Assembly: GCF_003918875.1 (NCBI RefSeq)
Contig: NW_025767083.1
Coordinates: 930,001-994,000, forward strand
Length of the DNA: 64,000 nt
Reading direction: 5' to 3'
From: Haliotis rubra
Lineage: Eukaryota
The notes beneath the pieces were generated by a model. The model saw only the letters and a list, made by a program, of their open reading frames with translations, had not been told where the DNA came from and did not search any database. How positions within the stretch are numbered: the first letter of the stretch is position 1; each line of letters begins with the position of its first letter. The translations under genes were made by a program, and so were the position numbers. Of the stretch, positions 33,801 through 34,909 are shown piece after piece.

Positions 33801-34504
33801 CATCTTTCCACTGTAAGTAGCCCCACAGCAGGAGGGTGGAGGAGCTGGACATGGGCAAGCTGAACTTGACGTGGTCACCGGCTGGAGGGAAGAGTAAGTA
33901 CATTGGAAGCCCTCTAAACCGGCATGCATTGGGACCGGCAAAAATGGCGGTATAGAGGGCCTGCCAGTTAGAGAACCTTTGTAGTTCAAAGTCTCTTTTT
34001 ACGAGGACACGGAAAAGTACCAGAGAGAGTCATAACTTACAGAAAAATAAGGGAAGCTGAACCCAAAAGTCTCCTCACAACTTTTGAGGTAAATCCAGCA
34101 TGCTCATTATACCAAGTGTCCAAACAACGTCAAGTGATTAAAATACGAAATGGTGTTCGAAAAGGACATTTCAGAGTTTCAAACTTCATTGACAAAGAAT
34201 ATAAATTCCCTATTTTAATTCGATCATTTTGACTTGGACAGTGTTTATGGGTTCTAAATACATGTATAACCAAACAGAGTCCAGAGAACTACTGACCATC
34301 ATACCAGCCTCCGGTCAGATCCTCCCCATTATCTCCCTTGTCTCCCAGGGCGGAGTCACCTCGCCACTTGATGGGGTTGTTGGCTGGAAGTTTACCGGAT
34401 CTCTGAGCGTCATAGAACAGGATGGACTTGCCAAGAGCCTCGCCATAGTTGTATCTTGCTGCCGAAGCTGCAGCCGCTAGAGCTGCCAATACCAACACCA
34501 GCAT
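27832..34504 (-). CDS. GH9 endoglucanase gene C: signal peptide fused directly to the GH9 domain (no CBM), 463 aa
   Basis: 9 coding exons: 34504-34297, 33881-33694, 33341-33182, 32939-32828, 32003-31853, 30465-30321, 29689-29518, 28252-28062, 27896-27832 (1392 nt, in frame). Catalytic motifs intact. Confidence 0.95.
28988..29164 (+). mobile_element. SINE family 1, full length (putative source copy)
   Basis: 10-bp TSD atttacatga (28978-28987, 29165-29174). Confidence 0.9.
30551..30809 (+). mobile_element. SINE family 2, full length
   Basis: 13-bp TSD cacctttccatga (30538-30550, 30810-30822). Confidence 0.88.
31521..31755 (-). mobile_element. SINE family 2 copy
   Basis: Reverse complement of the family consensus. 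Confidence 0.8.
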
Positions 34505-34909
34505 GATGTCTGAGGAGAACAGAAAATACTATCTAGATTATCCTTCGGTAATGTTTCAATAAAAGCAACAAATAAACATTTCTAATAATCACGATAAAAT
34601 CTACTTAAAACAGAGTATAATTCCGAGAGAAATGGCATCAGCATGTGTCTATGAATCACTATCAAGTAGTAACGACACCAGGTGTTCAAGAAATACGTGA
34701 GCGGATTCTGCCCCAGCGACAGAGCCCATAATAAACACTTGCAATGACGTGAGATTGTTTCACCTGAACAGGAACATCTGGCCTAAGTCACAAGGAGATT
34801 GTACCTGACATCACGTTGGTGGGAAACACGACTCACGTAACACCCGTTTGTTACACAAAGCATGCTGCGAGTGCCAACATTCTGATATCACTGGATATCA
34901 AAGGATATC

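What the first reader, a model, noticed from the sequence alone, without database searches (positions are those of the whole stretch)
34297..34509. Gene C made by precise in-frame exon fusion that deleted the CBM
Seen: C and D share the same signal peptide ([16 protein letters not shown]), acceptor context (cag|acatcATG) and promoter. In D it continues DVTIGNHW... through two introns to GGTARYNY. In C, Ala16 (34457-34459) joins RYNY inside one exon. The equivalent of D 49224-51316 (CBM, linker, two introns) is gone, with the junction in a CxGC Ala-codon microhomology and not at splice sites. Inference: a microhomology-mediated genomic deletion landing at the signal-peptide/catalytic boundary. 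Loss rather than gain is supported because B and E have the CBM with the same intron phases.
Basis: partly seen in the sequence, partly recalled or inferred. Interest (0 to 1): 0.75.

Follow-up and report, generated by a model that had tools for sequence, protein, structure and literature searches.

The report
Abalone cellulase that lost its CBM
One copy in a tandem cluster of blacklip abalone cellulase genes lost its cellulose-binding module through a clean, in-frame 1.7-kb genomic deletion that joined the secretion signal to the catalytic domain; the case is tidy, but this kind of domain loss is already known.

Summary
The window comes from Haliotis rubra. Gene C (window 27832-34504, minus strand) is the intact RefSeq protein XP_046580067.1 (463 aa, GH9 domain only). 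Its first coding exon joins signal-peptide codon 16 to Arg-Tyr-Asn-Tyr, the start of the catalytic domain.

The loss reading is strongly supported:
- A second contig (C683) carries copy X (579 aa, CBM2+GH9). Its flanks are about 97% identical to C on both sides, and it holds 1,713 extra bases exactly at window 34460|34461.
- Those bases are 127 nt of exon 1, intron 1, exon 2, intron 2 and 10 nt of exon 3, which is 129 codons, in frame.
- C and X are sisters, nested among CBM-bearing Haliotis genes.

- The parent is X-type (HdEG66 orthologue), not D.
- Promoter sharing with D is weak.
- "Microhomology-mediated" cannot be shown: 0-2 perfect bases is a chance level.

A short-read contig from a second animal bridges the junction. 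Expression is untested, because no RNA run was found. CBM-less GH9 enzymes arose repeatedly in molluscs, so this is a new, unusually legible member of a known kind. The scan had already noted the array's graded 0/1/2 CBM architecture on this same window.

The parts
34297..34509 (-). First coding exon of gene C. It holds 5 nt of 5'UTR after the acceptor, signal-peptide codons 1-15/16, the deletion junction and the first 53 codons of the GH9 domain. The donor is G|GTCAGT.
   Evidence: The translation equals residues 1-69 of RefSeq XP_046580067.1 (P0343).
34457..34465 (-). Deletion junction, sense strand TCGGC|AGCA|AGA. Homology to the parental exon 1 ends at TCGGC. Homology to the parental exon 3 begins within CAGCAAGA.
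   Evidence: Three-way comparison with X and D and with D-like. The BLAST break falls at 34460|34461. The junction string is identical in the two other C-type copies on C683.
34460..34504 (-). Signal peptide [15 protein letters not shown]. The A-S-A motif at -3/-1 is retained, so the predicted mature N-terminus is ARYNYGEAL.
   Evidence: Sequence. The cleavage site is inferred from the -3/-1 rule only. Chain 4zg8_A starts AQYNY, aligned to C residue 16.
27832..34504 (-). Gene C coding region, 9 coding exons: 34504-34297, 33881-33694, 33341-33182, 32939-32828, 32003-31853, 30465-30321, 29689-29518, 28252-28062, 27896-27832. The 463-aa protein has a GH9 domain only.
   Evidence: The spliced model reproduces P0343 exactly. 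Pfam GH9 covers residues 20-441 over the whole profile, with no CBM2.
35810..35858 (-). Probable 5' non-coding exon of C, with an in-frame upstream ATG, spliced to the acceptor at 34509. A TATA-like TATCTATATAGACAG lies at 35884-35898. A tRNA-derived SINE sits in the intervening intron (34898-35235).
   Evidence: Inferred by homology to the 5' exon used in the RefSeq model of the C' copy (P0342). Not confirmed by RNA.
49224..51316 (-). The stretch of paralogue D that has no counterpart in C: the rest of exon 1, intron 1, exon 2 (CBM2 and linker), intron 2 with a roughly 0.85-kb 30-nt minisatellite, and the first 14 nt of exon 3.
   Evidence: D = P0230, with CBM2 at residues 31-127 and GH9 at 150-571.
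44389..51364 (-). It is a more distant paralogue, not the parent of C.
   Evidence: dS between C and D is 0.185, against 0.065 between C and X. Trees.

Best explanation
Gene C is an intact, secreted-type GH9 endo-beta-1,4-glucanase of Haliotis rubra. It arose recently from an HdEG66-type (CBM2-linker-GH9) tandem duplicate.

One genomic deletion of about 1.7 kb did it. One breakpoint lay in exon 1, just after signal-peptide codon 15/16. The other lay 10 nt into exon 3, two codons before the GH9 domain. The deletion removed 129 codons (the whole CBM2 and the Ser/Thr/Gly-rich linker) and two introns. It kept the reading frame, the signal peptide, the 5'UTR intron, the upstream region and all eight downstream introns.

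The join looks like ordinary end-joining with 0-2 nt of overlap.

The product should be a roughly 49-kDa free catalytic domain. Its N-terminus (ARYNY...) matches that of naturally CBM-less invertebrate GH9 enzymes. It probably acts on soluble or amorphous glucan alongside the CBM-bearing paralogues.

Shown here: the anatomy, the direction of change (loss), the single origin, and the intact reading frame. Inferred: secretion and cleavage site, enzymatic activity, expression, and any selective benefit.
For: Identity:
- The spliced model of C equals RefSeq XP_046580067.1.
- The contig length of 1,011,503 bp and the source names identify H. rubra.

Domains: C has GH9 only. X and D have CBM2+GH9.

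Progenitor state:
- Window 33537-34460 matches C683 51020-50099 at 96.8%, and window 34461-39337 matches C683 48385-43509 at 97.5%. C683 holds 1,713 extra bases between the two matches.
- Those bases are 127 nt of exon 1, 380 of intron 1, 250 of exon 2, 946 of intron 2 and 10 nt of exon 3, or 387 coding nt.
- C and X share residues that D and the orthologues lack: SSDDKDE (also in the H. rubra paralogue P0335), ATNDKS, GFHEN and EVVGFF (also in H. diversicolor P0350).

Phylogeny:
- C and X are sisters (99/96; SH-aLRT 97).
- They sit inside a 13-sequence Haliotis clade in which every other member carries the CBM.
- The old CBM-less Patella/Lottia clade lies outside that clade.

Single event: the same junction string occurs in all three C-type copies.

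Not an assembly artefact: a 348-nt short-read contig from a second animal (run X3) covers 34418-34761.

Constraint:
- dN/dS between C and X is 0.18.
- The catalytic DAGD and NEVACDYN motifs are conserved against 4zg8.

Native-like N-terminus:
- The 4zg8 chain starts AQYNY, aligned to C residue 16.
- Aplysia AkEG45 starts AKNYGQALG (PMC4123733).
Against: - No RNA evidence was obtained. No RNA run held the stretch, so expression rests only on the existence of a RefSeq model.
- On the C lineage, substitutions are 7 nonsynonymous to 6 synonymous, against 2 to 12 on the X lineage. That hints at relaxed constraint or adaptation, but the numbers are small and the polarisation by D may be disturbed by gene conversion.
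- The two sister copies on C683 carry frameshifts. That contig is dense in small indels typical of uncorrected long-read error, so this is ambiguous.
- Whether X is a paralogue or a structural allele of C is unresolved.
- The exact ancestral sequence at the breakpoints is unknown, so the repair pathway cannot be named.
Confidence: 0.85

Rival explanations
1. C and X are structural alleles or copy-number haplotypes of one locus. On this view the CBM presence/absence is a polymorphism segregating in H. rubra, not a fixed paralogue difference. The deletion mechanism is the same; only the population status differs.
For: - In C683, X sits downstream of a complete D-like gene at about the same spacing as C sits downstream of D in the window: 16.6 kb against 14.8 kb.
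- Window 27-59.7 kb is collinear with C683 61.6-21.9 kb at 96-97.5%.
- The source-sample contig breaks exactly at 34461, as expected if both continuations exist in one animal.
Against: - C683 also holds two further units with C-type genes. Its first 8 kb and 8 kb near its far end (132-140 kb) have no high-identity match in the window's contig or elsewhere, so it is not a simple haplotig.
- The window's C is closer to C' on C683 (0.7%) than to X (1.9%).
Confidence: 0.2
2. The fusion came from an aberrantly spliced transcript. Cryptic sites in exon 1 and exon 3 would have been used, the transcript reverse-transcribed, and the cDNA recombined into the gene (cDNA-mediated intron and exon loss).
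For: Two introns and an exon vanished together and the result is in frame. A GT lies right after the 5' breakpoint in X (TCGGCG|GTTGAC).
Against: - The AG dinucleotides near the 3' breakpoint (AAAG|AA in X, ACAG|CC in D) would give out-of-frame products that do not match the observed junction.
- All eight downstream introns and the 5'UTR intron are retained. cDNA conversion tracts usually remove neighbouring introns too.
Confidence: 0.04
3. The junction is an assembly or meta-assembly artefact, for example a collapsed or chimeric join in a repetitive cluster.
For: The region is a tandem array with near-identical copies. Contig C683 is error-rich. The assembly is a Nanopore hybrid meta-assembly (title of PMC6774278).
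Against: - The identical junction occurs in three assembled copies on two contigs.
- An independent short-read contig from another sample spans it with 40 and 300 nt on the two sides.
- Gene C in the window has a perfect open reading frame through nine exons.
Confidence: 0.03
4. C is a decaying by-product of array turnover: not expressed, or not secreted, and on its way to becoming a pseudogene.
For: - The C lineage has 7 nonsynonymous to 6 synonymous changes, against 2 to 12 in X.
- The sister copies C' and C'' are frameshifted in the assembly.
- No RNA holder was found.
Against: - The window copy is fully intact with canonical splice sites.
- Catalytic motifs are conserved.
- Its upstream 4.9 kb is 97.5% identical to that of X.
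- The lineage ratio of about 0.3 is still below 1.
- The frameshifts in C683 look like homopolymer or indel errors.
Confidence: 0.15

Closest known systems
HdEG66, the 66-kDa GH9 cellulase of Haliotis discus hannai (Q75UN9; Suzuki et al. 2003, known here through citing papers and the database entry)
   Same: C has the same kind of signal peptide ([15 protein letters not shown] in HdEG66, [15 protein letters not shown] in C). It falls in the same 90%-identity protein cluster and has the same catalytic domain and C-terminal KCHG tail.
   Different: HdEG66 and its orthologues in six other Haliotis species carry an N-terminal CBM2 plus linker of about 130 residues. C lacks all of it.
Copy X of H. 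rubra (XP_046562694.1, contig C683)
   Same: Its flanks, introns and exons are 97-98% identical to C. It shares C's derived residues and is C's sister in both trees.
   Different: X retains the 1,713 bp that encode the CBM2 and linker. In the assembly its C-terminus is cut short by a 1-nt change in an A-run, which may be an error.
[quoted passage not shown]
   Same: It is a secreted, CBM-less GH9 catalytic domain whose mature N-terminus, AKNYGQALG..., starts one or two residues before the domain. That is where C's predicted mature end ([10 protein letters not shown]) lies. AkEG45 has the highest Vmax on CMC among the sea hare cellulases, with a higher Km than the 65-kDa form.
   Different: It belongs to a different, older gastropod lineage and does not derive from the Haliotis CBM-bearing clade. 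Its biochemistry is measured; that of C is not.
Short GH9 proteins of other molluscs (Lottia 469 aa, Patella 473 aa, Littorina 463 aa, Biomphalaria 461 aa and others) and the solved invertebrate GH9 structures 4ZG8, 3WC3, 1KS8
   Same: They have the same architecture of signal peptide plus GH9 only. The 4zg8 chain starts at the residue aligned to C's Ala16.
   Different: They sit on separate, mostly deep branches. The short form needs at least 7 changes on the mollusc tree. C is the youngest case, and the only one here with its progenitor preserved at about 97% identity.

Membership tests
Glycoside hydrolase family 9 endoglucanase (Pfam PF00759) | Full-length GH9 catalytic domain | tested here: met
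   P0343 residues 20-441 match profile positions 1-444 of 444, at 485 bits.
Glycoside hydrolase family 9 endoglucanase (Pfam PF00759) | Catalytic Asp pair (DAGD) and catalytic Glu (NEVA.DYN) conserved | tested here: met
   GGWYDAGDHVKF and NEVACDYN align identically to the solved GH9 4zg8. The assignment of these motifs as catalytic rests on general knowledge of GH9.
Glycoside hydrolase family 9 endoglucanase (Pfam PF00759) | Endo-beta-1,4-glucanase activity | not testable with these tools
   Needs recombinant or purified enzyme.
HdEG66-type modular cellulase (CBM2-linker-GH9) | N-terminal family-2 carbohydrate-binding module | tested here: not met
   P0343 has no PF00553 hit. X (residues 18-112) and D (residues 31-127) do.
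HdEG66-type modular cellulase (CBM2-linker-GH9) | Orthology or close paralogy of the catalytic domain and signal peptide | tested here: met
   C falls in the same 90% cluster as Q75UN9 and is nested in the Haliotis clade.
Secreted digestive enzyme | Cleavable N-terminal signal peptide | tested here: inconclusive
   The hydrophobic [15 protein letters not shown] with A-S-A at -3/-1 is retained. No signal-peptide predictor or protein data were available.
Microhomology-mediated end-joining deletion | Perfect microhomology of several nucleotides shared by both parental ends at the junction | tested here: inconclusive
   Perfect overlap is 0 nt with X as the ancestor, 1 nt with the 5' end of X plus the 3' end of the D-like copy on C683, and 2 nt (the imperfect CxGC) with D. 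The chance of 1 nt or more is 0.44 and of 2 nt or more is 0.15.
Processed (retro-)copy or cDNA-mediated intron loss | Loss of introns across the converted tract, with junctions at splice sites | tested here: not met
   Eight downstream introns are retained. The 5'UTR intron is inferred from the acceptor at 34509 and homology to the C' model. The breakpoints lie inside exons.

The most novel reading that the evidence does not exclude
The CBM-less gene C and the CBM-bearing copy X are alternative states of one unit in a copy-number-variable tandem array. Blacklip abalone would then segregate haplotypes that differ in how many free-catalytic-domain and CBM-tethered cellulases they encode, and this dosage would be under diet-related selection.
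Probability: 0.15. Interest if true: 0.5.

Novelty: new member of a known kind. Interest (0 to 1): 0.32.

Why it matters
Domain loss in duplicated genes is usually inferred from old, blurred comparisons. Here both the derived gene and a copy in the ancestral state survive in the same genome at 97-98% identity. The event can therefore be read to within a few nucleotides: one deletion, both breakpoints inside exons, in frame, producing the same N-terminus that naturally CBM-less invertebrate GH9 enzymes have.

It adds a dated, mechanistically explicit case to what appears to be recurrent CBM loss in mollusc cellulases. It also gives a natural matched pair (C and X) for testing what the animal CBM2 contributes to seaweed cellulose digestion.

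It changes no general principle. The gene is already in RefSeq as a predicted protein.

Tried and rejected
- RNA evidence. The single run search returned no run on record as RNA. The single read-laying run was swamped by a very high-copy SINE at 34.9-35.1 kb and used contigs only, so it says nothing about expression or about the other species.
- Other species. Contigs from runs of two other organisms cover parts of the exon, but none listed bridges the junction. No conclusion was drawn.
- Protein searches for the junction elsewhere. A search on residues 1-42 of C returned only CBM-bearing cluster representatives. The only proteins found with the SP-RYNY join are two H. rubra entries inside the HdEG66 cluster. 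That search is limited by length and clustering, so absence elsewhere is not shown.
- The library-wide search with exon 1 gave only distant representatives. It was useful only as a way to reach full-length proteins.
- More of the window's contig and the end of C683. I searched with the C683 ends instead.
- Pseudogene status of C' and C''. I considered this and left it open, because the indel pattern on C683 looks like uncorrected long-read error.
- Recombination at the shared GGCGG motif of exons 1 and 3. Rejected: the product would be out of frame and does not match C.
- The HdEG66 primary paper is not held, so its reported mature N-terminus is not cited.

Full report
**What is there**

The window holds a tandem cluster of animal GH9 cellulase genes. 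On the minus strand lie the 5' end of A (1.65-4.35 kb), B (8.1-18.7 kb), C (27.8-34.5 kb) and D (44.4-51.4 kb). E runs on the plus strand from 58.0 kb (self-BLAST; six-frame GH9 search).

The window is G000:C2193:930001-994000 of a 1.378-Gb, 2,855-contig assembly. RefSeq proteins of Haliotis rubra that sit on a contig of 1,011,503 bp are reproduced exactly by spliced models from the window. The organism is therefore the blacklip abalone.

**The observation**

The ruler label must be read as the first base of each row; my first attempt was one base off.
- On the minus strand the acceptor cag|ACATC precedes the ATG at 34504-34502.
- Codons 1-16 give [16 protein letters not shown], and Ala16 is 34459-34457.
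- The next codons are AGA TAC AAC TAT (RYNY), and the exon ends at 34297 before GTCAGT.
- D has the same 16 residues and the same acceptor context. It continues DVTIGNHW... through two introns to ...GGTARYNY.
- BLASTN splits C's exon into two parts. Window 34234-34461 matches D 49003-49228 at 92.7%. Window 34458-34538 matches D 51318-51404 at 85%.

**Gene C is intact**
- A spliced model with nine coding exons and canonical sites translates to the 463-aa RefSeq protein XP_046580067.1 (P0343) without a single difference.
- Pfam finds a full GH9 domain (residues 20-441 over the whole 444-position profile) and no CBM2. D (P0230) and X (P0346) have CBM2 plus GH9.
- The DAGD and NEVACDYN motifs are conserved against solved GH9 structures.

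**The progenitor state is preserved, and it is not D**

A search of the whole assembly with the junction region found two further full-length matches, both on the 141,927-bp contig C683. It also found a split match on the same contig: the signal-peptide and upstream half at 99%, and the catalytic half at 95%, 1.7 kb away. I fetched 140 kb of C683.
- Window 33537-34460 aligns to C683 51020-50099 at 96.8%.
- Window 34461-39337 aligns to C683 48385-43509 at 97.5%.
- C683 holds 1,713 extra bases exactly between the two alignments.

This gene, X, is RefSeq XP_046562694.1 (579 aa, CBM2+GH9). With the canonical splice choice, the extra bases break down as follows:

| Piece of X | Length (nt) |
|---|---|
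| End of exon 1 | 127 |
| Intron 1 | 380 |
| Exon 2 | 250 |
| Intron 2 | 946 |
| Start of exon 3 | 10 |
| Total | 1,713 (387 coding nt = 129 codons) |

C and X share residues that D and the orthologues in other species lack: SSDDKDE, ATNDKS, GFHEN and EVVGFF. Two of these have an exception: SSDDKDE also occurs in the H. rubra paralogue P0335, and EVVGFF also occurs in H. diversicolor P0350. Synonymous divergence is 0.065 between C and X, against 0.185 between C and D.

D is therefore a usable stand-in for the geometry, but the parent was an HdEG66-type gene. The D interval is longer (2,093 against 1,713 nt) largely because of a minisatellite in D's intron 2.

**Loss, not gain**
- In a careful tree of the catalytic domains, C and X are sisters (ultrafast bootstrap 99, SH-aLRT 96). 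They sit inside a Haliotis clade whose 13 other members, from eight species, all carry the CBM.
- The CBM-less Patella/Lottia genes form a separate old clade.
- A 49-sequence mollusc tree gives the same placement (SH-aLRT 97 for C+X; 100 for the Haliotis clade).
- In that tree, proteins under 480 aa need at least seven changes of state. CBM-less forms therefore appear to have arisen repeatedly, with the caveat that some short entries may be annotation artefacts.

**One event**

All three C-type copies (window C; C' at C683 85.7 kb; C'' at 117.9 kb) have the identical junction string. In a 1.3-kb, mostly intronic block, p-distances are 0.7% for C-C', 1.4% for C-C'' and 1.9% for C-X. The deletion therefore happened on the branch after the split from X and was then copied.

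**Mechanism**

The breakpoints are inside exons. Eight downstream introns are retained. The 5'UTR intron is inferred from the acceptor at 34509 and from homology to the C' model. So this was a DNA deletion, not a splicing or cDNA event.

The amount of microhomology depends on the assumed ancestor:
- With X's present sequence (TCGGC|GGTTGAC and GGTAAAGAA|AGATAC) there is none, and one later A>C change is needed.
- With X's 5' end and the D-like exon 3 of C683 (GGTACAGCAAGATAC) there is 1 nt (C), and no later change is needed.

In 20,000 random breakpoint pairs within the same region, 44% gave 1 nt or more, 15% gave 2 nt or more, and 1.3% gave 4 nt or more. "End-joining deletion" is justified. 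"Microhomology-mediated" is not.

**Is the junction real?**
- It occurs in three assembled copies.
- A 348-nt short-read contig from a different sample of the same species covers 34418-34761, with 40 and 300 nt on either side of the junction (run X3).
- The source sample's contig ends exactly at 34461. That is the expected behaviour of a de Bruijn graph when both the C-type and X-type continuations are present.

**Upstream region**

C and D share about 40 nt upstream of the ATG and two weak collinear patches of 51 nt at 78% and 218 nt at 75%. C and X share 4.9 kb at 97.5%.

By homology with the RefSeq model of C', C has a 5' exon at 35810-35858 behind a TATA-like element at 35884-35898. That exon has an in-frame upstream ATG that would add 18 residues if used. 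This is not confirmed by RNA.

**Constraint**

dN/dS between C and X is 0.18. Polarised with D, the C lineage has 6 synonymous and 7 nonsynonymous changes, and the X lineage has 12 and 2. That hints at relaxation or adaptation after the loss, but the numbers are small and conversion with D could mislead.

**Caveats on C683**
- Its exons carry many 1-2-nt indels, dense in C''. There is one in a G-run of C' exon 1 and one in an A-run that truncates X. This is the signature of uncorrected long-read error, so I do not call these copies pseudogenes.
- C683 consists of three units of about 33-48 kb. Each is joined as window 59685|17959, the signature of tandem duplication of the whole B-5'...E-5' segment.
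- The first 8 kb of C683 and 8 kb near its far end (132-140 kb) have no high-identity match elsewhere, so it is not a plain haplotig.
- Whether X is a paralogue or a structural allele of C stays open.

**Function**

The predicted mature N-terminus (A-S-A | [11 protein letters not shown]) aligns with residue 1 of the crystallised CBM-less GH9 chain 4zg8 (AQYNY...). It also matches the sequenced N-terminus of Aplysia AkEG45 (AKNYGQALG; PMC4123733).

In the sea hare the 45-kDa GH9 enzyme has the highest Vmax on CMC and lichenan, a higher Km on CMC than the 65-kDa form, and synergises with other enzymes (PMC3675134, PMC6226162). By analogy, C is most likely a free catalytic domain for soluble or amorphous glucan. 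This is inference only.

**Known or new**

The gene is annotated in RefSeq. CBM-less GH9s are common in gastropods. Domain loss by deletion in duplicates is a familiar process. No paper found here describes this event. In the protein clusters examined, the SP-RYNY join occurs only in H. rubra. It is a new, very legible member of a known kind.

**Verdict**

Interest is modest.

Noticed in passing
C683 (L051-L064), junctions near 21855/21856, 70095/70096, 102827/102828; window 59685 and 17959: Contig C683 is a tandem array of three units of about 33-48 kb. In each, sequence matching window ...59685 (E's 5' part) is followed directly by sequence matching window 17959... (B's CBM exon and upstream). 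This is the signature of tandem duplication of the whole 42-kb B-5'...E-5' segment. The second and third units carry only the 3' remnant of a D-type gene.
   Followed up: partly
C683 117.0-124.5 kb (C''), 85.8 kb (C' exon 1), 60.97 kb (X last exon): There are many 1-2-nt indels in otherwise near-identical exons, several of them in homopolymer runs. They look like uncorrected long-read errors, and they make the RefSeq models on this contig (for example XP_046562688.1, and the truncated end of XP_046562694.1) suspect.
   Followed up: partly
window 34898-35235: A tRNA-derived SINE lies in the inferred 5'UTR intron of gene C. Its core (34934-35064) drew summed contig depths of about 10^7-10^8 in all four runs from three organisms, so it is an extremely abundant family across these abalone genomes.
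   Followed up: no
window 8233-8435 vs 44646-44848 and 8755-9086 vs 45247-45578: The 3' exons and adjoining intron of B and D are 96.7-97.5% identical, while their 5' catalytic exons are only 81-83% identical. That mosaic suggests gene conversion between non-adjacent array members.
   Followed up: no
window 35810-35858: C's inferred 5' exon contains an ATG in frame with the main start (it would add MTLCFSELQISMLLSVDI). RefSeq uses the equivalent ATG for the C' copy but not for C. It could act as an upstream start or lengthen the signal peptide's N-region.
   Followed up: partly
window 49598-50445 vs C683 30973-33119: The 30-nt minisatellite in intron 2 of D is about 0.85 kb in the window and about 2.1 kb in the D-like copy on C683, so its length is variable.
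   Followed up: no
window 23068-24440 and 25755-26862: Two large minisatellite blocks lie in the B-C intergenic region. Both are also present, with different lengths, in each C683 unit.
   Followed up: no
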